This document shows positions 14,654 through 30,397 of a stretch of 30,397 nucleotides of DNA, in pieces. Made by a program: the position numbers and the translations under genes. The stretch comes from Octopus sinensis (taxonomy: Eukaryota). Each line of letters starts with the position of its first letter. Positions within the stretch are counted from its first letter, which is position 1. The stretch is from assembly GCF_006345805.1 (NCBI RefSeq), contig NW_021832618.1, positions 1 to 30,397 on the forward strand, written 5' to 3'. Under the pieces are notes generated by a model. It searched no databases and had not been told where the DNA came from. It saw only the letters and a program-made list of their open reading frames with translations.

Positions 14654-15033
14654 TTAGCCGTATTTCGTCTGCCGTTACGTTCTGGGTTCAAATTCCGCCG
14701 AGGTCGACTTTGCCTTTCATCCTTTCGAGGTCGATTAAATAAGTACCAGTTACGCACTGGGATCGATGTAATCGACTTAATCCGTGTGTCTGTCCTTGTT
14801 TGTGCCCTCTATGTTTAGCCCCTTGTGGGTAGTAAAGAAATAGGTATTTCGTCTGCGGCTATGTTCTTAGTTCAAATTCCGCTGAGGTCGACTTTGCCTT
14901 TCATCCTTTCGAGGTCGATTAAATATGTACCAGTTACTCACTGGAGTCGATGTAATCGACTTAATCCGTCTGTCTGTCCTTGTTTGTGCCCTCTATGATT
15001 AGCCCTTTGTGGGTAATAAAGAAACAGATATTT
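14654..15033 (+). mobile_element. SINE B head-less dimer (two 184-bp body units)
   Basis: Units start GTATTTCGTCTGC at 14660 and 14844. Junction AAAGAAATAG|GTATTTCGTCTGC. Confidence 0.9.
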
Positions 15034-15074: not shown

Positions 15075-15440
15075 CTAGTCTGCTATGAAGAGGATAGAAC
15101 ATCGAAGAGCGATAGAAAGATTTATGCTAGGATTATCCTGACGAGAACATGTTCGAAATGAGATAATTAAAGAACGGAGCGGAGCGGACGATGTGGATCG
15201 CAGAATACCAAAGACATAATTTCTAAGAGGCCGGCCATGTTGCAAGGTTTGCCGACAACAGATGGACCCGTGCAGTTGCCGAATGGTATCCAAGAGATCG
15301 GGGAAGACTACTTTGAAGGCCTCCACGGCGATGGAAAGACGACTTAGTCAAGCAATTTGGGCCAATATGGAAAAAAATTAGGCAACCAAGACATAATTGA
15401 AAGCGCATTGTGATCAGCGATGTATAACAGCATCTGATAG
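15075..15440 (+). mobile_element. RTE/RTEX-like LINE 3' fragment, decayed
   Basis: Translation RRAIERFMLGLS*REHVRNEIIKERSG, then after a shift AGHVARFADNRWTRAVAEWYPRDRGR..RPPRRWKDDLVKQFG. Confidence 0.85.
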
Positions 15441-16537: not shown

Positions 16538-16860
16538 TAAATACCTTCAAAATGTGGAGGCACATGGCCTAGGGGTTAGAGCAGCGGACTCGCGATTGAA
16601 GGATTGCGAGTTCGAATCTCAGACCGGGCGATGTGTGTGTTTATGAGCGAATCACCTAAGCTCTACGCGGCTCCGGCAGAAGGTAAATGGCGAACTTCTG
16701 ATGACTCTTTCGCCACCACATTCTCTCACTCTTTCCTCCTGCATCTAGCAGCTCGCCTGCGACGGACCGGCGTCCCGTCCAGATGGGGAACCTATACGCC
16801 AAGGAAACCGGGAAACCAGCCCTTCATGAGCCAGGCATGGATCGAGAAGGAACAAACAAA
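16538..16860 (+). mobile_element. SINE family C, full length, with V-domain-like 3' module
   Basis: tRNA-like head GTGGAGGCACATGGCCTAGGGG...GAGTTCGAATCTC from 16554. The 3' part CCTGCGACGGACCGGCGTCCCGTCCAG...GGAAACCGGGA resembles the V-SINE core as I recall it. Tail GAACAAACAAA. Confidence 0.8.
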
Positions 16861-17076
16861 TACCTATTTCGTTACTACCCACAAGGGGCTAAACACAGAC
16901 AAGGACAGACAAACGGATTAAGTCGATTACATCGACCCCACTGCGTAACTGTTACTTATTTAATCGAACCCGAAAGGATGACAGGCAAAGTCGACCTCGG
17001 CGGAATTTGAACTCTGAACGAAACGGCAGACGAAATAGCGCTAAGCATTTCGCCCGGCGTGCTAACCATTCTGTCA
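16861..17076 (-). mobile_element. SINE family B monomer
   Basis: Reverse complement matches SINE B. The 3' end reads ...CGAAATAGGTA(TTT), i.e. into the multimer junction sequence. Confidence 0.85.
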
Positions 17077-19275: not shown

Positions 19276-19873
19276 GGCGGCGTGCTGGCAGAATCGTTAG
19301 CGCGCCGGGCGAAATGCGTAGCCGTATTTCGTCTGCCGTTACGTTCTGAGTTCAAATTCCGTCGAGGTCAACTTTGCCTGTTATCCTTTCGGGGTCGATT
19401 AAATAAGTACCAGTTACACACTGGAATCGATGTAATCGACTTAATCCGTTTGTCTGTCCTTGTTTGTCCTCTCTGTGTTTGGCCCCTTGTGGGTAATAAA
19501 GAAATAGGTATTTCGTCTGCCGTTACGTTCTGAGTTCAAATTCCGCCGAGGTCAACTTTGCCTGTCATCCTTTCGGGGTCGACTAAATAAGTACCAGTTA
19601 CACACTGGGATCGATGTAATCGACTTAATCCGTTTGTCTGTCCTTGTTTTTCTTCTCTGTGTTTGGCCCCTTGTGGGTAATAAAGAAATAGGTATTTCGT
19701 CTGCCGTTACGTTCTGAGTTCAAATTCCGCCGAGGTCAACTTTGCCTGTCATCCTTTCGGGGTCGATTAAATAAGTACCAGTTACACACTGGGATCGATG
19801 TAAACGACTTAATCCGTTTGTCTGTCCTTGTTTGTCCCCTCTATGTTTAGCCCCCTGTGGGTACTAAAGAAAT
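19276..19873 (+). mobile_element. SINE B trimer: one head plus three body units, 20-bp target-site duplication
   Basis: Head 19276-19323; units start at 19324, 19508 and 19692 (184-bp period). AAATATTGGTTTCAAATATT occurs at 19256-19275 and 19874-19893. Confidence 0.92.
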
Positions 19874-19893
19874 AAATATTGGTTTCAAATATT

Positions 19894-20086
19894 GGCACAA
19901 AGCCAGCAAGGCCGGGAGAGGGGGTAAGTGGATTACAGCGACCTCAGTGATCAACTGGTACTTATTTTATTGACTCCGAATAGATGAAAGGCAAAGTCGA
20001 CCTCGGCGAAATTTGTATTCAGAACGTGACGAAATGCCGCTGAGCATTTCCACCCGTTATGCTAACCATTCTGCCAGCTCACCGCC
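19894..20086 (-). mobile_element. Older SINE B variant, antisense and abutting the trimer
   Basis: Plus strand ...GATGAAAGGCAAAGTCGACCTCGGCG...GCTAACCATTCTGCCAGCTCACCGCC is the reverse complement of the SINE B head and core. Confidence 0.85.
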
Positions 20087-20439
20087 TTAAATCAATTAAA
20101 ATACTGCCAACAGCAAACAGCCTCTTTCGATAGCAATATCAATAATTGAATAATAAAATATCGTCTCCAGAACAGTATGAGACCAATCATTAATAGTGAA
20201 AGTGCCGCTGGGCAAGACTGGGATATGAAGAAAATTAGAGGAAACTTCAAAACGTTTTACTTATTTCTCACTAGGCTTAAGAGTGCTATTTCATCAATTT
20301 ATTCACTGATTGATGTAAATAACATCCTCTAAACGATGCCAAAGAAATTAAGGATATTCTACGGTTGTAACAGTAATTTGGTTTCAGTGATTTCGATGTG
20401 GTTGACTTAGTTTCGATGCCCTGACATAAGATTCGGTGC

Positions 20440-21287: not shown

Positions 21288-21508
21288 TGGCAGAAACGTT
21301 AGCACGCCGGGCGAAATGCGTAGCCGTATTTCGTCTGCCGTTACGCTCTGAGTTCAAATTCCGCCGAGGTCGACTTTACCTTTCATCCTTTCGGGGTCGA
21401 TTAAATAAGTACCAGTTACACACTGGGGTCGATATAATCGACTTAATCCGTTTGTCTGTCCTTGTTTGTCCCCTCTGTGTTTAGCCCCTTGTGGGCAGTA
21501 AAGAAATA
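21288..21508 (+). mobile_element. SINE family B monomer
   Basis: TGGCAGAAACGTTAGCACGCCGGGCG...GGCAGTAAAGAAATA, between (CT)n and (TA)n tracts. Confidence 0.9.
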
Positions 21509-24060: not shown

Positions 24061-24750
24061 GAAGTGGCTGTGTGGTAAGTAGCTTGCTTACCAACCACAG
24101 GGCTCAGGGCTCAGTCCCACTGCGTGGCATCTTGGGAAAGTGTCTTCTGCTATAGCCTCAGACCGACCAAAGCCTTATGAGTGGATTTGGTAGACGGAAA
24201 CTGAAAGAAACCTGTCGTATATATGTATATTTATATATTAGGTGTGTGTATATGTTTGTGTGTCTGTGAATTGGCTGACGGAAACTGAAAGAAGTTCGTC
24301 TTTCATATATATATATACATATATATAAGAATTCTTTGCGTAATAAGATAAAATACCAAGGCTGTATAAATATTAGAGTATAATATCTATCTATAAATGT
24401 TCTAATATCTATACAGCCTTGGTTTTTTTTCTTATTACGCAAAAAATTCTTATATACACACGCTGACATAGAACATATATATATATATATATGTATGTAA
24501 GCAAGCATGTATGTATGTATGTATGTATGTATGTATGTATGTATATGTTTGTGTGTCTGTGTTCGTCCCCCCAACATCGCTTGACAACCGATGCTGGTGT
24601 ATTTACATCACCGTAACTTAGCGGTTCGACAAAATACACCGATAGAATAAGTACTAGGCTTACAAAGAATAAATCCTGGGGTCGATTTGCACGACTAAAG
24701 GCGGTGTTGCAACATGGCCGCAGTCAAATGACTGAAAAAATAAATGAATA
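24061..24750 (+). mobile_element. SINE family A interrupted at 24269-24540
   Basis: Head GAAGTGGCTGTGTGGTAAG and tail CAGTCAAATGACTGAAAAAATAAATGAATA. GTATATGTTTGTGTGTCTGTG is repeated at 24248-24268 and 24541-24561 around the interruption. Confidence 0.85.
24323..24474. repeat. Palindromic (foldback) element, copy 1
   Basis: Arms 24323-24377 and 24401-24455 (ATATAAGAATT.TTTGCGTAATAAGA...CCAAGGCTGTATA.ATATTAGA), plus the unique tail ACACACGCTGACATAGAAC. Confidence 0.9.
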
Positions 24751-25574: not shown

Positions 25575-25632
25575 TTGATAGATAAATATATACATATATA
25601 CATACATACATACATCATACATAGATAATAGC

Positions 25633-25678
<46 letters not shown>

Positions 25679-25989
25679 TCAAAAGGAGTGTTATAATACT
25701 AATCCACATATACAATATATATATATATATATTATATACATAGACATACAAACATACATGCATACATACATACATACATACATACATACATACATTCATA
25801 CATTCATACATACATATACATATATATATATATATAGTGACGTATTTTTGCCATTTCAATATGGCTAACCCCTAAGGGTGGATGCTACTGTAGTTTTTAG
25901 CCCCAGGAGGACACACTCCTCCAGCTGGCCATAGACACACTATCTGTGTCCTGTCAGTATTTGCAAAGGGAAGTCATCCTTCCCGTCTT

Positions 25990-26059
25990 CAACTTATGAT
26001 ACACACGGACTCGTGTTTCGAGGTATTGACCTCTCGTCAGCGTGTGACAATCATAGTTG
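25990..26059 (-). ncRNA. Minimal type I hammerhead ribozyme, copy 1
   Basis: Minus strand: CAACTATGAT-TGT-CACACG-CTGACGA-GAGGT-CAAT-ACCTC-GAAA-C-ACGA-G-TC/CGTGTG-T-ATCAT-A-AGTTG. Complete CUGANGA, GAAA and GUC core. Predicted cleavage between plus 26008 and 26007. Confidence 0.88.
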
Positions 26060-26340
26060 TCGCCGAGAATTAGATCTCCTTCACAAATACTTATACTTTT
26101 TCCAGCGCCCACTGTCGCTGATATTGAAAAAGTGAAACAAACAATGATAAATATCAAAGTGAGTTATATACAGTAGCGGTAACACATCGTGACGTATTTT
26201 TGCCATTTCAATATGGCTAACCCCTAAGGGTGGATTCTACTGTAGTTTTTAGCCCCAGGAGGACACACTCTCCAGCTGGCCATAGACACACTATCTGTGT
26301 CCTGTCAGTATTTGCAAAGGGAAGTCATCCTTCCCGTCTT

Positions 26341-26409
26341 CAACTTATGATACACACGGACTCGAGTTTCGAGGTATGACCTCTCGTCAGCGTGTGACAA
26401 TCATAGTTG
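26341..26409 (-). ncRNA. Minimal type I hammerhead ribozyme, copy 2
   Basis: CACACG-CTGACGA(26390-26384)-GAGGTCATACCTC-GAAA-C-TCGA-G-TC/CGTGTG. Predicted cleavage between 26359 and 26358. Confidence 0.9.
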
Positions 26410-26690
26410 TCGCCGAGAATTAGATCTCCTTCACAAATACTTATACTTTTTCCAGCGCCCACTGTCGCTGATATTGAAAAAGTGAAATCAAACAATGATA
26501 AATATCAAAGTGAGTTATATACAGTAGCGGTAACACATCGTGACGTATTTTTGCCATTTCAATATGGCTAACCCCTAAGGGTGGATGCTACTGTAGTTTT
26601 TAGCCCCAGGAGGACACCTCCTCCAGCTGGCCATAGACACACTATCTGTGTCCTGTCAGTATTTGCAAAGGGAAGTCATCCTTCCGTCTT

Positions 26691-26760
26691 CAACTTATGA
26701 TACACACGGACTCGAGTTTCGAGGTATTGACCTCTCGTCAGCGTGTGACAATCATAGTTG
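26691..26760 (-). ncRNA. Minimal type I hammerhead ribozyme, copy 3
   Basis: CACACG-CTGACGA(26741-26735)-GAGGTCAATACCTC-GAAA-C-TCGA-G-TC/CGTGTG. Predicted cleavage between 26709 and 26708. Confidence 0.9.
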
Positions 26761-26888
26761 TCGCCGAGAATTAGATCTCCTCACAAATACTTATACTTTT
26801 TCCAGCGCCCACTGTCGCTGATATTGAAAAAGTGAAATCAAACAATGATAAATATCAAAGAGTATATATATATATATATATAATATGT

Positions 26889-26920
<32 letters not shown>

Positions 26921-26921
26921 T

Positions 26922-26985
26922 TACGATGGGCCTATTTCAATTTCCGTTTCCCAAATCCACTCACATGGCTTTGGTCGGCCCGAGG
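26922..26985 (-). mobile_element. SINE family A, short internal fragment
   Basis: TTTCCGTTTCCCAAATCCACTCACATGGCTTTGGTCGGCCCGAGG matches positions 250-295. Confidence 0.7.
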
Positions 26986-27465: not shown

Positions 27466-27909
27466 CGCAGGAGTGGCTGTATGGTAGGTAGCTTGATAAC
27501 CAGCCACATGGTTCTGGGTTCAGTCCCACTGCGTGGCATCTTGGGCAATTTTCTTCTGCTATAGCCCCAGGCCGACCAATGCCTTGTGAGTGAATTTGGT
27601 AGACGGAAACTGAAAGAAAGCTGTCGTATATTCATATATATATATATATATATTATATATATTATATATATATAACTATATATATATATATATGTATGTG
27701 TATGTATATACTTGTGTGTCTGTGTGTTGGTCCCTCTAGCATTGCTTGACAACCGATGCTGGTGTGTTTTACGTCCCCGTCACTTAACGGTTCGGCAAAA
27801 GTACTGGGCTTACAAAGAATAAGTCCCGGGGTGGATTTGCTCGACTAAAGGCGGTGCTCCAGCATAGCCGCAGTCGAATGACTGAAACAAGTAAAAGAGT
27901 AAAAGAGTA
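27464..27909 (+). mobile_element. SINE family A, full length
   Basis: GGCGCAGGAGTGGCTGTATGGTAG...GGTTCAGTCCCAC head, internal (TA)n, tail GACTGAAACAAGTAAAAGAGTAAAAGAGTA. Confidence 0.88.
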
Positions 27910-28096
27910 TATATATATATATATTATATATATATATATTATATATATATATATGCATACATACAAACATGCATAATACACACATATATATATACATATA
28001 CATATATAATATATATATATATATATATAAAATGTATACTTTATATAGATATCTTAATAAATTGTCTATGTAAATGTATATTTACACGACTGCAAT

Positions 28097-28177
28097 CTGG
28101 CAGAATCGGTAGCATGACGGGAAAATGCTTAGCGGCATCTCGTCTGTTCAGAGTTCAAATTCCGCCGAAGTCGACTT
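28097..28177 (+). mobile_element. SINE B 5' fragment cut off by the LINE
   Basis: CTGGCAGAATCGGTAGC...GAGTTCAAATTCCGCCGAAGTCGACTT, then an abrupt switch to LINE sequence. Confidence 0.75.
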
Positions 28178-28496
28178 AACTTACCTAACTATCCATATGC
28201 CACCTAACTATCCATATGCCAAAAAGGATGGAAACAATGGGATGGACCACGCATCACCTGCCCCAAAACGGAGGTACGCAGATGTGGTGCGTGCCCAAAA
28301 CACCAACGTGTTGTTGAAAGGGCAGCTGCTGAGCAAGAATCTTTTTTGTGCATGGCACAAAAGATTGTACAGCAGCTAACCTGGCTCCATCAATCATCAA
28401 GCCAGCTCGCAGATGGGACTACCCACAGTTCACAAGACCGCCAACAGCAGATGGACCCAGGTGGACACCACTGGCAACAGCATACACCTCACCTCG

Positions 28497-29018
28497 ATGC
28501 TCCTACTGAACATCAGAGGACTACTAACACACAGTAACAGGACAAAAGTCCCGTTCTTGAGAGACTTTGTTGCATGCAATCAAGCCTTATGCATAACACT
28601 TACGGAAACACACCTGAAACCGGACGTAGCGGATGCGGAATTACACATACCACAGTATGTTGTACTACGGACCGACAGAAAAGAAAGGAGTCATGGAGGA
28701 GTTGCTATGTACATCCGTGAGGACCTCACACCCCAGGTCCTTTTGTCATACTCAAACTCGGTGTGTGACACACTAATTGTACACATAAGGCAACTTGATG
28801 TAGTTGTGTGTGCTACATATCGCCCTCCAGATGCCCCAAGCCATATGGGCAAGTTTGAAGACTGCCTTTTAAAAATAGAAGAAGTTCTAGACACACTAGA
28901 ACAGCACATAAGTGTACTTCTCATGGGAGAGTTCAACCTGCCCAATGTCAGATGGCCCGAGGGCCTTTCTCTCCCAGGAATGACACGATGTGAACGGGGA
29001 CAGGCGAGGCCCTCCTGA
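28497..29018 (+). pseudogene. LINE ORF2 APE endonuclease domain (frameshifts at its 3' end)
   Basis: MLLLNIRGL, LCITLTETHL, RTDRKERSHGGVAMYIRE, CATYRPPD, LLMGEFNLP; then after a shift MEQVILHPTRAGNT. ATG at 28497 is in frame with track ORF 28413..29018. Confidence 0.9.
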
Positions 29019-29714
29019 ACCTCATCAACACCCAGTACATGGAGCAGGTAATACTCCACCCAACCAGGGCAGGTAACACACCTGTCCTCTGCTTCACAAT
29101 AATATGGATCTCATCCATAATGAAAGTGACACCGACACTACTCTCGGATCAACATGGTAGAGCTGACTATGTACGGGCCAAAGGAAAGCATGGACATGCA
29201 GCCTACAAGAAGCTCTCAGAATCTTTCCAGCTTGAACTTCAATAAGGCAACTGGAACAAATTGAGAAAGAGATCCTCAAACAAAACTGGCCTGAATGTCT
29301 CTCCTCGCCGGACATCGACATGAAACTCCAACAATTCATGTCTGTAATGCAAGCCATATGCTACAATATGTCCCAGAGAGAAAGGCCACTGTACACAAGA
29401 ACAAAATCCCCAGAGAGAGGAAAATTTTAATGAGACGGCGTACAAAAATTTCAAATCGCCTAAACAACAAATTGAAAGCAGTAAAAAGTCCCGCCTGAAA
29501 ATAAAACTGTTGGAAATTGAAAATTGTCTGCAACTCTCCCATGAAAAGGAAAGAGCAGACAAAGAAACCTGGGCTATAGACAACATAAAAACTAACCCCA
29601 GAGCTTTCTACGGGTATGCCAAAGAAACAGCTACGGTGCACTGTAGGATAGGGCCACTCCTTGAAAAGGATGGCACACTCACAGGAAAACCAATGAGGGT
29701 AAGTGAAATACTGA

Positions 29715-30397
29715 ATGAACAATTCAAGTGTTTTCACTCCACTCCTTAGGCATTTCCAAATCAGCAATCCAACTGACTTCTTTACCACTGCAGATATAAA
29801 ATCAGAGGCGGCGACGATAAATTACATCGATATAAAGGAAGACGATGTAATAAAAGCTATAGATGAAATGAAAACAGACTCAGCTATTGGCCCCGATGGA
29901 TTCCCGGCAATCCTCCTAAAAGCATGTAAAAGAGTCCTAGCAAGACCACTGCAGTTCCTCTTTCAGAGCTTCCTTGCAGCTGGCAAACTTCCAAGAAAAC
30001 TGAAGGAAGGTAAAATATGCCCTATTCATAAAGGAGGTAGCAGAGCGGAGGCCAAGAACTACAGACCTATCTCTCTCACCTCACACATCAGCAAGGTCAT
30101 GGAACGAATAGTTAGAAGGAACTAATCACCTTCCTTGAAAATGACTTGCTGCCTGACACCCAACATGGTTTCCGACCAGGAAGAAGCTGCTTAACTCAGC
30201 TCCTACAACACTATGACTGGGTGCTGAAACAACTGCTCAACAACTCAAATGTGGAAGTCATATATCTCGACTTTGCAAAGCCTTCGATAAAGTCGATCAT
30301 GGAATGATATGTCACAAACTGCGTGATCTTGGCATAGTTGGAAAACTGGGAGAATGGCTTCATGACTTTCTGAAGAATAGAAGTCAGGTGGTAGCAG
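29715..30397 (+). pseudogene. LINE ORF2 reverse transcriptase domain (N-terminal part, frameshifted)
   Basis: SAIGPDGFPAILLK, PIHKGGSRAEAKNYRPISLTSHISKVMERIV; shift; QHGFRPGRSCLTQLL, IYLDFAK; shift; FDKVDHGMICHKLRDLGIVGKLGEWLHDFLKNRSQ. Confidence 0.93.

What the first reader, a model, noticed from the sequence alone, without database searches (positions are those of the whole stretch)
25837..26860. Retrozyme-like array: three ~351-bp units, each with an intact minus-strand hammerhead ribozyme
Seen: three head-to-tail, nearly identical units (two substitutions and several 1-nt indels by eye). Each reads on the minus strand CACACG-CTGACGA-GAGGT(CAAT)ACCTC-GAAA-C-NCGA-G-TC/CGTGTG. Stem I extends past a UGU/U internal loop by about 10 bp, and no core nucleotide is mutated. 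Established: tandem type I hammerhead repeats of a few hundred bp define metazoan non-LTR retrozymes and Penelope-like-element terminal repeats; their transcripts self-cleave to monomers that can circularise. Inference: a minus-strand transcript would release monomers of 351 nt (26358-26008) and 350 nt (26708-26359). These would be non-coding, possibly circular RNAs mobilised in trans, plausibly by a Penelope-like RT. I do not know of this family being described in this lineage, but I cannot check that.
Basis: partly seen in the sequence, partly recalled or inferred. Interest (0 to 1): 0.92.

Follow-up and report, generated by a model that had tools for sequence, protein, structure and literature searches.

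The report
Octopus tandem repeat carrying hammerhead ribozymes
A three-unit, 351-bp tandem repeat in an octopus genome carries an intact self-cleaving hammerhead RNA motif in every unit, which makes it a new example of an already described class of small non-coding mobile elements ("retrozymes"), not a new kind of thing.

Summary
TRF finds a 351-bp repeat at 25837-26860 with 2.9 copies and 98% identity. Each unit has a complete type I hammerhead on the minus strand. A structural descriptor finds exactly these three in the window and none in 300 shuffles. Rfam RF00163 matches all three over its full length at 32.2, 28.7 and 25.7 bits. That is significant but below the 34-bit gathering cutoff, so default annotation misses them.

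The ribozyme has the canonical metazoan design: helix I of 6 bp, then an internal loop and 10 more bp; helix II of 4-5 bp; helix III of 2 bp capped by a palindromic UCGA loop. Two copies cofold spontaneously into a double hammerhead.

The unit is non-coding, 43% GC and strongly self-paired on the ribozyme strand. It sits in a (TA)n microsatellite. The host is an octopod.

Every sequence-level criterion for a non-LTR retrozyme (Cervera and de la Peña 2020) is met. Cleavage, circular RNA, copy number and mobilisation by Penelope-like elements remain untested. I found no paper describing retrozymes in cephalopods.

Verdict: a real feature, a new member of a known kind, of moderate to low interest.

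The parts
25837..26860 (-). Tandem array of 2.9 units of a 351-bp non-coding repeat. The sense strand, which carries the ribozyme, is the minus strand. The right edge may extend to about 26872, where the unit's own TATATA run merges with the flanking (TA)n.
   Evidence: TRF; unit alignment; self-blast of the unit against the window
26691..26760 (-). Hammerhead copy C, with helix I extended. The Rfam match is 26747-26703 and cleavage falls between 26709 and 26708.
   Evidence: RF00163 32.2 bits, E 8.5e-6; descriptor hit; coordinates
26341..26409 (-). Hammerhead copy B. Loop 2 is one nucleotide shorter (CAU). The Rfam match is 26396-26353 and cleavage falls between 26359 and 26358.
   Evidence: RF00163 28.7 bits; descriptor hit
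25990..26059 (-). Hammerhead copy A. Loop 3 reads ACGA instead of UCGA, which breaks the palindrome. The Rfam match is 26046-26002 and cleavage falls between 26008 and 26007.
   Evidence: RF00163 25.7 bits; descriptor hit; coordinates
26359..26708 (-). Predicted 350-nt monomer released by cleavage at copies C and B.
   Evidence: Arithmetic from the cleavage sites; MFE -120.5 kcal/mol, z -6.5; circular MFE -115.1, 63% paired
26008..26358 (-). Predicted 351-nt monomer released by cleavage at copies B and A.
   Evidence: MFE -114.7, z -5.05
26709..26860 (-). 5' partial unit of 152 nt, starting at unit position about 199 (sense numbering from the cleavage site) and carrying hammerhead C.
25837..26007 (-). 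3' partial unit of 171 nt, ending at unit position about 169-171. It has no ribozyme downstream.
25578..25836 (.). Left flank: (ATAC)n/(AT)n compound microsatellite abutting the array.
   Evidence: TRF; sequence
26861..26917 (.). Right flank: (TA)28 microsatellite abutting the array. The array therefore sits inside TA-rich simple sequence, which hides any target-site duplication.
   Evidence: TRF; sequence

Best explanation
This is a short genomic array of a non-LTR retrozyme in an octopod genome. A retrozyme is a non-autonomous, non-coding retroelement whose unit carries a canonical type I hammerhead ribozyme.

Shown by computation here:
- The array and the three intact ribozyme motifs, with their helix geometry.
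- A catalytic fold that is not the lowest-energy fold of a single motif but is the lowest-energy fold of two motifs together (a domain-swapped double hammerhead built on the palindrome ACUCGAGU).
- A strongly self-paired monomer, more stable on the ribozyme strand than on the other strand.
- No ORF with homologues, and no autonomous element next to the array.

Inferred from the literature on the family:
- The minus strand is transcribed, probably by read-through.
- Neighbouring units pair as double hammerheads, or act more slowly as single motifs. [quoted passage not shown]
- The 350/351-nt monomers are circularised by an RtcB-type tRNA ligase.
- The circle, in which the single ribozyme prefers an inactive fold, is stable. 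It can be copied by the reverse transcriptase of a Penelope-like element.
- Copying round a circle gives a multimeric cDNA. This would explain an insertion of 2.9 units whose ends (unit positions about 199 and about 169) do not coincide with the cleavage site, and which lies in a (TA)n microsatellite.
For: - Array.
- Three full-length RF00163 matches with significant E-values.
- Descriptor: 3 hits in the window against 0 in 300 shuffles.
- Helix I: 6 bp, then a UGU/U loop, then 10 more Watson-Crick pairs, recovered by unconstrained folding.
- Helix III: a 2-bp hairpin costs +2.2 kcal/mol, while an intermolecular 8-bp helix gives -12.1.
- Single motif: the catalytic fold is -18.3 against an MFE of -24.6.
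- Two motifs: the unconstrained cofold MFE is the double hammerhead, at -53.6 and -53.9 against -48.7 and -49.2 for two separate monomers.
- Strand asymmetry: sense-strand z-scores are -6.5 and -5.05, the antisense z-score is -3.8, and the MFE difference is about 22 kcal/mol.
- Coding: the longest ORF inside the array is 67 aa, and concatenated unit ORFs have no homologues among 5.8 billion proteins.
- GC content is 43%.
- No ribozyme on the plus strand.
- Host is an octopod.
- Literature: the family definition and the mussel precedent, with the same 2-bp helix III plus a palindromic tetraloop and units of about 350 bp (PMC7229834). The canonical versus minimal PLE hammerhead design (PMC4209133). 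Recently active Penelope families in Octopus vulgaris (PMC13282606). Retrozymes related to PLE pseudo-LTRs (10.64898/2026.07.22.740005).
Against: - Only one locus was seen. No second copy turned up in 88 kb of other octopod DNA or in the viral and metagenome collections. Multicopy, dispersed status, which is what makes it a mobile element, is therefore unproven.
- The three units are 98% identical, so there is no covariation or selection signal. Two of about nine differences fall inside the ribozyme, both in loops.
- All Rfam scores are below the gathering cutoff.
- Target-site duplications cannot be read in the microsatellite.
- No PLE is in the window.
- There are no expression data.
- The nearest-neighbour energies ignore the tertiary contacts that decide hammerhead activity.
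Confidence: 0.8

Rival explanations
1. A local tandem duplication, or a small satellite-like repeat, that happens to retain a hammerhead inherited from an older element. It is no longer, or never was, mobilised, and it is not expressed as circular RNA.
For: Only one locus was observed, and no copy was found in 88 kb of other octopod sequence. A tandem array of 2.9 units could also arise by slippage or unequal exchange. No target-site duplication is readable. Copy A has lost the helix III palindrome and copy B a loop 2 base.
Against: The core is intact in all three copies. The RNA is strongly self-paired with a strand bias towards the ribozyme strand. The array ends are offset from the cleavage site and lie in a microsatellite, as expected for a cDNA copied from a circular or multimeric template. 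Historical 'satellites' with hammerheads (newt, cave cricket, Schistosoma) have been re-read as retrozymes (PMC7229834).
Confidence: 0.12
2. A fragment of an autonomous Penelope-like element: its pseudo-LTRs in tandem, with the RT/GIY-YIG ORF deleted.
For: PLE pseudo-LTRs carry type I hammerheads and form partial tandems. PLEs prefer microsatellite targets (PMC8557442). Retrozymes are phylogenetically close to pseudo-LTRs in Xenopus. Octopus has recently active Penelope families.
Against: None of 146 window ORFs hit RVT_1 or GIY-YIG. Nothing lies between the units. The ribozyme has the canonical design (helix I 6 bp, helix II 4-5 bp, helix III 2 bp plus a palindromic loop). It does not have the minimal PLE design (helix II 7-8 bp, helix I 4-5 bp, no helix III; PMC4209133).
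Confidence: 0.06
3. A chance match to the hammerhead consensus inside an ordinary tandem repeat.
For: Rfam scores are below the gathering cutoff. The three copies are one evolutionary event, not three independent observations.
Against: The whole-window E-value is 2e-4 for the best copy, already multiplied over 4227 families. There were 0 descriptor hits in 300 shuffles, about 18 Mb in all. Ten extra Watson-Crick pairs extend helix I outside the model. Loop 2 (UCAAUA) resembles the family consensus (CAAAUA).
Confidence: 0.01
4. An integrated copy of a free-living viroid-like or satellite-like circular RNA, not a genome-resident retroelement.
For: It has the small size, the hammerhead, the self-paired structure and the multimeric head-to-tail arrangement typical of rolling-circle replicons.
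Against: A ribozyme is present in one polarity only. It is a type I hammerhead of the metazoan genomic design. It is embedded in octopod repeats and microsatellites. No match was found in the viral or metagenome collections.
Confidence: 0.01

Closest known systems
Non-LTR retrozyme of the mussel Mytilus galloprovincialis (construct Mg353; Cervera and de la Peña 2020, PMC7229834)
   Same: The host is also a mollusc. Tandem units are about 350-390 bp, AT-rich and non-coding. There is one type I hammerhead per unit, and helix III is 2 bp capped by a palindromic tetraloop (AC-GCGC-GU there, AC-UCGA-GU here). The predicted RNA is highly self-paired.
   Different: There is no detectable sequence similarity outside the core. 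The mussel motif lacks most of the conserved loop 1 and loop 2 nucleotides, whereas loop 2 here resembles the canonical one. The mussel element has about 5000 copies, shown self-cleavage (kobs about 0.1 per min) and abundant circular RNA. None of these is known for the octopod element.
Amphibian retrozymes / newt satellite 2 (HHR_Amex1 and HHR_Amex2, 330 and 350 bp units)
   Same: The unit size is similar. They have a canonical type I hammerhead with a weak helix III and a palindromic loop. They cleave efficiently only as dimers, which matches the double-hammerhead MFE found here.
   Different: Amex1 has a 1-bp helix III. Copy number is about 1e5. Sequences are unrelated. The host is a vertebrate.
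[quoted passage not shown] 2017)
   Same: They have type I topology, act as dimers, and occur in tandem. They are the likely source of the reverse transcriptase and possibly of the retrozyme itself.
   Different: The PLE motifs have helix II of 7-8 bp, helix I of 4-5 bp and essentially no helix III. They flank an RT/GIY-YIG ORF. Here the design is canonical and no ORF is present.
Plant LTR retrozymes (Cervera et al. 2016, PMC4918200)
   Same: They are non-autonomous, hammerhead-processed, circular-RNA-producing retroelements.
   Different: They carry type III hammerheads inside 350-bp LTRs. They have PBS and PPT motifs, 4-bp target-site duplications, 600-1000 nt circles and Ty3/Gypsy mobilisation.

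Membership tests
Hammerhead ribozyme, type I (RF00163) | Conserved catalytic core: C3 U4 G5 A6 N7 G8 A9, G12 A13 A14, A15.1-U16.1, H17, and the G10.1-C11.1 pair | tested here: met
   All three copies read CUGACGA...GAAA...GUC with G10.1-C11.1.
Hammerhead ribozyme, type I (RF00163) | Three helices around the core, with helix I open and helices II and III closed | tested here: met
   Helix I is 6 bp plus a 10-bp extension. Helix II is 5 bp (or 4 bp with a 6-nt loop). Helix III is 2 bp plus a tetraloop. The descriptor gives 3 hits against 0 in 300 shuffles.
Hammerhead ribozyme, type I (RF00163) | Rfam curated gathering score (34 bits). This is an annotation cutoff, not a biochemical criterion. 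| tested here: not met
   Scores are 32.2, 28.7 and 25.7 bits, with E-values from 8.5e-6 to 1.2e-3 locally. The matches are full length and significant but sub-threshold, so default pipelines skip them.
Hammerhead ribozyme, type I (RF00163) | Site-specific self-cleavage after position 17 | not testable with these tools
   This needs in vitro transcription of monomer and dimer constructs.
Canonical metazoan type I hammerhead (as opposed to the PLE minimal hammerhead) | Helix I about 6 bp to loop 1, helix II about 4 bp, and helix III 1-2 bp capped by a palindromic 2-4 nt loop (PMC4209133) | tested here: met
   Helix I has 6 bp before the UGU/U loop. Helix II is GAGG/CCUC with an optional U-A pair. 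Helix III is AC/GU with a UCGA loop. ACUCGAGU is a perfect palindrome in copies B and C.
Non-LTR retrozyme (Cervera and de la Peña 2020) | Head-to-tail repeats of about 150-450 bp | tested here: met
   Period 351, 2.9 copies.
Non-LTR retrozyme (Cervera and de la Peña 2020) | A type I hammerhead in every unit, all in the same polarity | tested here: met
   Three of three ribozyme positions are intact on the minus strand and none on the plus strand.
Non-LTR retrozyme (Cervera and de la Peña 2020) | No protein-coding capacity and no LTRs | tested here: met
   The longest ORF inside the array is 67 aa. There are no homologues and no terminal repeats other than the units themselves. PBS and PPT motifs were not searched for specifically.
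Non-LTR retrozyme (Cervera and de la Peña 2020) | GC below 50% and a stable, highly self-paired predicted RNA | tested here: met
   GC is 43%. MFE is -120.5 with z -6.5, and 63% of bases pair in the circular fold.
Non-LTR retrozyme (Cervera and de la Peña 2020) | Many dispersed genomic copies, with target-site duplications where visible | not testable with these tools
   No eukaryotic genome collection can be searched by DNA here. There are 0 copies in 88 kb of octopod loci, which is uninformative. The flanks are (TA)n, so a duplication cannot be read.
Non-LTR retrozyme (Cervera and de la Peña 2020) | Expression as linear and circular RNA of unit length | not testable with these tools
   No transcriptome data are available here.
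Non-LTR retrozyme (Cervera and de la Peña 2020) | Co-occurrence with Penelope-like elements in the same genome | not tested
   This rests on literature only. There are 31 recently active PLE families in Octopus vulgaris (PMC13282606). No PLE is in this window.
Penelope-like element (terminal repeats) | Repeats flank an ORF encoding an RT and a GIY-YIG endonuclease | tested here: not met
   A Pfam scan of 146 window ORFs gave only a LINE-type APE endonuclease at 28380-29015, with no RVT_1 or GIY-YIG.

The most novel reading that the evidence does not exclude
This is the first member of a cephalopod retrozyme family. It would still be active in Octopus, producing abundant circular RNAs of about 350 nt whose cleavage is gated by double-hammerhead formation in multimeric transcripts, and it would be mobilised by the recently active Penelope families of the genus. 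Because the circles are long, nearly double-stranded RNAs, they would also be candidate substrates of the very active cephalopod RNA-editing machinery. That last point is pure speculation.
Probability: 0.35. Interest if true: 0.45.

Novelty: new member of a known kind. Interest (0 to 1): 0.3.

Why it matters
Retrozymes are a recently recognised source of abundant small circular RNAs in animals, and their link to Penelope-like elements is still being worked out. A cephalopod family would extend the known host range within molluscs. It would offer a clean natural example in which the active fold is favoured only in multimers. It would also add an unannotated repeat class to octopus genomes, where two thirds of the DNA is repeats and a recent detailed annotation does not mention ribozymes. 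There is a practical point too. All three ribozymes score just under the Rfam gathering cutoff, so standard non-coding RNA annotation of cephalopod genomes probably undercounts such elements. None of this changes what is known about how retrozymes work.

Tried and rejected
1. Exact-pattern scans for the ribozyme (24 specified bases, variable loop) in JGI metagenome contigs and IMG/VR, and for helix I plus the core in metagenomes, gave 0 hits. These collections hold essentially no octopod DNA, so this says nothing about copy number.
2. A protein-level search with five concatenated unit ORFs, meant to catch other copies through spurious gene calls, gave no hit.
3. An exact look-up of the neighbouring LINE ORF found nothing on record.
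4. I fetched 88 kb of Octopus sinensis, Argonauta hians and one other assembly around LINE relatives. They contain no retrozyme unit and no hammerhead.
5. Comparison with the published coral, mussel and axolotl retrozyme constructs found no similarity.
6. A hammerhead-like core at 15138-15158 (+), with complementary AUUAUC/GAUAAU flanks, was rejected. It has no U16.1/H17 and no Rfam hit even at E <= 10.
7. I searched for a PLE in the window through a Pfam scan of 146 ORFs and found none.
8. The supplement of the Naiad/PLE paper is not held, so no octopus PLE sequence could be obtained to compare pseudo-LTRs with the unit. I ran no further search on a PLE motif recalled from memory.
9. The many miRNA-family 'hits' in the e-value scans are low-complexity (TA)n/(CATA)n hairpins far below their gathering scores, and I ignored them.

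Full report
**1. The observation**

Tandem Repeats Finder reports a single array at 25837-26860. It has period 351, 2.9 copies, 98% matches and 1% indels. I aligned the two complete units (26358-26008 and 26708-26359, minus strand) with the two partial end units. They differ at about nine positions, and most of the differences are single-nucleotide indels.

Each unit contains, on the minus strand, CACACG-CUGACGA-GAGGU-CAAU-ACCUC-GAAA-CUCGAG-UC followed by CGUGUG. Copy B (26396-26353) has CAU instead of CAAU in loop 2. Copy A (26046-26002) has ACGA instead of UCGA in loop 3. No core position is changed.

**2. More than chance?**

- At Rfam's gathering thresholds the window has no hit at all.
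- With e-value reporting, RF00163 (Hammerhead_1) matches all three sites over the full model (1-45). Scores are 32.2, 28.7 and 25.7 bits against a gathering score of 34. E-values are 8.5e-6 to 1.2e-3 for the 1.3-kb scan and 2e-4 to 0.029 for the whole window.
- These are the only Hammerhead_1 matches in the window, and no other ribozyme family matches the array on either strand.
- I wrote a helix-aware descriptor: 6-bp helix I, CUGANGA, helix II with G10.1-C11.1, GAA, helix III with A15.1-U16.1, and H17. It finds exactly these three cores and none in 300 dinucleotide-preserving shuffles of the window on both strands.
- Outside the Rfam model, helix I continues after a UGU/U internal loop with 6 + 4 further Watson-Crick pairs. 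Unconstrained folding recovers this.

The three copies are one evolutionary event, but that one event is clearly not a chance motif.

**3. Anatomy of the ribozyme**

- Helix I has 6 bp up to an internal loop.
- Helix II is GAGG/CCUC, plus a possible U-A pair. The loop UCAAUA resembles the family consensus CAAAUA in the Infernal alignment.
- Helix III is only A-U and C-G, capped by UCGA.

This is the 'canonical' metazoan type I design described by Cervera and de la Peña. That design has helix I of 6 bp, helix II of 4 bp, and helix III of 1-2 bp with a small palindromic loop. It is not the minimal design of Penelope-like elements, which has helix II of 7-8 bp, helix I of 4-5 bp and no helix III (PMC4209133).

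The energies point to action as a dimer:
- As a hairpin, helix III costs +2.2 kcal/mol. The palindrome ACUCGAGU of two copies gives an 8-bp helix worth -12.1 kcal/mol.
- For a single 78-nt ribozyme segment, the catalytic secondary structure (-18.3) is not the minimum-energy fold (-24.6).
- For two segments, unconstrained cofolding returns the domain-swapped double hammerhead as the minimum. The values are -53.6 and -53.9 against -48.7 and -49.2 for two separate monomers.

This predicts efficient cleavage in multimeric transcripts and a quiescent ribozyme in the monomer or circle. That is the behaviour shown experimentally for newt and axolotl repeats (PMC7229834).

One caution applies. The mussel retrozyme has the same 2-bp helix III with a palindromic tetraloop (AC-GCGC-GU) and still cleaves as a monomer at about 0.1 per minute. 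Nearest-neighbour energies also ignore tertiary contacts. Monomeric activity is therefore not excluded.

**4. Products**

C17 is at 26709, 26359 and 26008. A minus-strand transcript would yield:
- a 5' piece ending at 26709;
- monomers 26708-26359 (350 nt) and 26358-26008 (351 nt);
- a 3' piece starting at 26007.

The monomers are strongly structured. MFE values are -120.5 and -114.7 kcal/mol, with z-scores of -6.5 and -5.05 against dinucleotide shuffles. In the circular fold 63% of bases are paired. The complementary strand folds about 22 kcal/mol worse, with z -3.8. This asymmetry is what one expects if RNA structure matters on the ribozyme strand.

**5. Coding capacity and surroundings**

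- The longest ORF inside the array is 67 aa. A search with the concatenated unit ORFs found no homologue.
- The unit is 43% GC.
- The array is embedded in simple sequence. (ATAC)n/(AT)n lies on the left up to 25836, and (TA)28 lies on the right from 26861. No target-site duplication can be read.
- In sense orientation the insertion begins at unit position about 199. It begins at about 187 if the unit's own UAUAUA, which merges with the flanking (TA)n, is counted. It ends at about 169.
- The ends are therefore offset from the cleavage site, and two cleavage junctions are intact inside the array. That fits a cDNA copied from a circular or uncleaved multimeric template. It does not fit one copied from a cleaved linear monomer. 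This is inference. Later unequal exchange could also have shaped the array.
- Just right of the microsatellite lies a fragment of an interspersed repeat that occurs several times in the window.
- A Pfam scan of 146 window ORFs found only an APE-type endonuclease of a decayed LINE at about 28.2-30.4 kb on the plus strand. It found no RVT_1 or GIY-YIG. No Penelope-like element lies within the 30 kb.

**6. Host**

The LINE fragment's best protein relatives are annotated in Octopus sinensis and Argonauta hians. Loci fetched from the O. sinensis assembly share the window's SINE-type repeats at 85-94% identity. The window therefore comes from an octopod, probably the genus Octopus.

**7. Other copies**

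I could not establish copy number:
- The metagenome and viral collections contain no exact match to the ribozyme or to helix I plus the core.
- 88 kb of octopod DNA from five fetched loci contain neither the unit nor any hammerhead.

None of these is a meaningful sample of a genome of about 2.8 Gb.

**8. Comparison with what is known**

Non-LTR retrozymes are defined as tandem repeats of about 150-450 bp with a type I hammerhead in each unit. They have no ORF, LTR, PBS or PPT, GC below 50% and highly self-paired RNAs. [quoted passage not shown] A 2026 preprint shows that Xenopus retrozymes are related to PLE pseudo-LTRs.

Every sequence-level criterion is met here. The criteria on dispersal, expression and co-occurrence could not be tested.

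The closest described relative by host and design is the mussel retrozyme, with units of about 350-390 bp and the same helix III design. There is no sequence similarity to it or to the coral and axolotl elements. This agrees with the statement that these repeats are species-specific.

For cephalopods I found:
- a count of 235 Hammerhead_1 Rfam hits in the giant squid genome paper;
- statements on PLEs in cephalopods.

No paper in the searchable library combines retrozymes with octopus or cephalopods in substance. A detailed 2026 repeat annotation of Octopus vulgaris lists 31 recently active PLE families but does not mention hammerheads or ribozymes.

**9. Verdict**

It is best filed as a new member, in a lineage apparently not yet described, of a known kind of element.

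The mechanism rests on strong precedent but is untested for this sequence. It comprises read-through transcription, hammerhead cleavage preferentially as a double hammerhead, ligase-mediated circularisation, and reverse transcription by a PLE enzyme. A specialist would find it expected, not surprising, so the interest is modest.

Noticed in passing
window 14660-15033 and 19324-19874 (+); single units at about 2642-2828, 21326-21508 and 16857-17037 (-): A 184-bp unit is repeated head to tail (2 and 3 copies, 91-95% identity). It begins inside the tRNA-like head of a SINE whose full head is visible at 19280-19325. The same unit occurs once in an Octopus sinensis locus (L001 10438-10625) at 92-94% identity. 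No ribozyme or tRNA is called in it. Why the SINE body is multimerised here is unexplained.
   Followed up: partly
window about 28208-30397 (+): A decayed non-LTR retrotransposon (APE endonuclease plus the start of an RT) with frameshifts and stops runs off the window end. Its best relatives are in Octopus sinensis and Argonauta hians, which is what identified the host. It is preceded at 28090-28175 by a fragment of the tRNA-like SINE head.
   Followed up: partly
window 15130-15168 (+): The sequence AUUAUC-CUGACGA-GAACAUGUUC-GAAA-UGA-GAUAAU looks like a hammerhead core with a complementary helix I. It lacks U16.1/H17 and a helix III, and it has no Rfam match even at E <= 10. I judge it a chance look-alike.
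   Followed up: yes
window 3-421, 24063-24268 (-), 27669-27926 (-), 26899-26985: These are several copies of an interspersed repeat, each adjoining (TA)n or (CATA)n microsatellites. They are 85-89% identical to multiple sites in Octopus sinensis loci L001 and L002. The retrozyme array lies in the microsatellite next to one such fragment.
   Followed up: partly
L001 7751 (+) and 14039 (-) (Octopus sinensis CM016884.1): A repeated element carries ACAC-CUGAUGA-AGGCU...AGCC-GAAA-U-GUGU in two inverted copies. It resembles a hammerhead core but has G at position 17, and there is no Rfam hit at the gathering threshold.
   Followed up: no
window 19900-20090: An inverted copy of the SINE lies directly after the three-unit 184-bp array, giving a long inverted repeat around 19880.
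   Followed up: no
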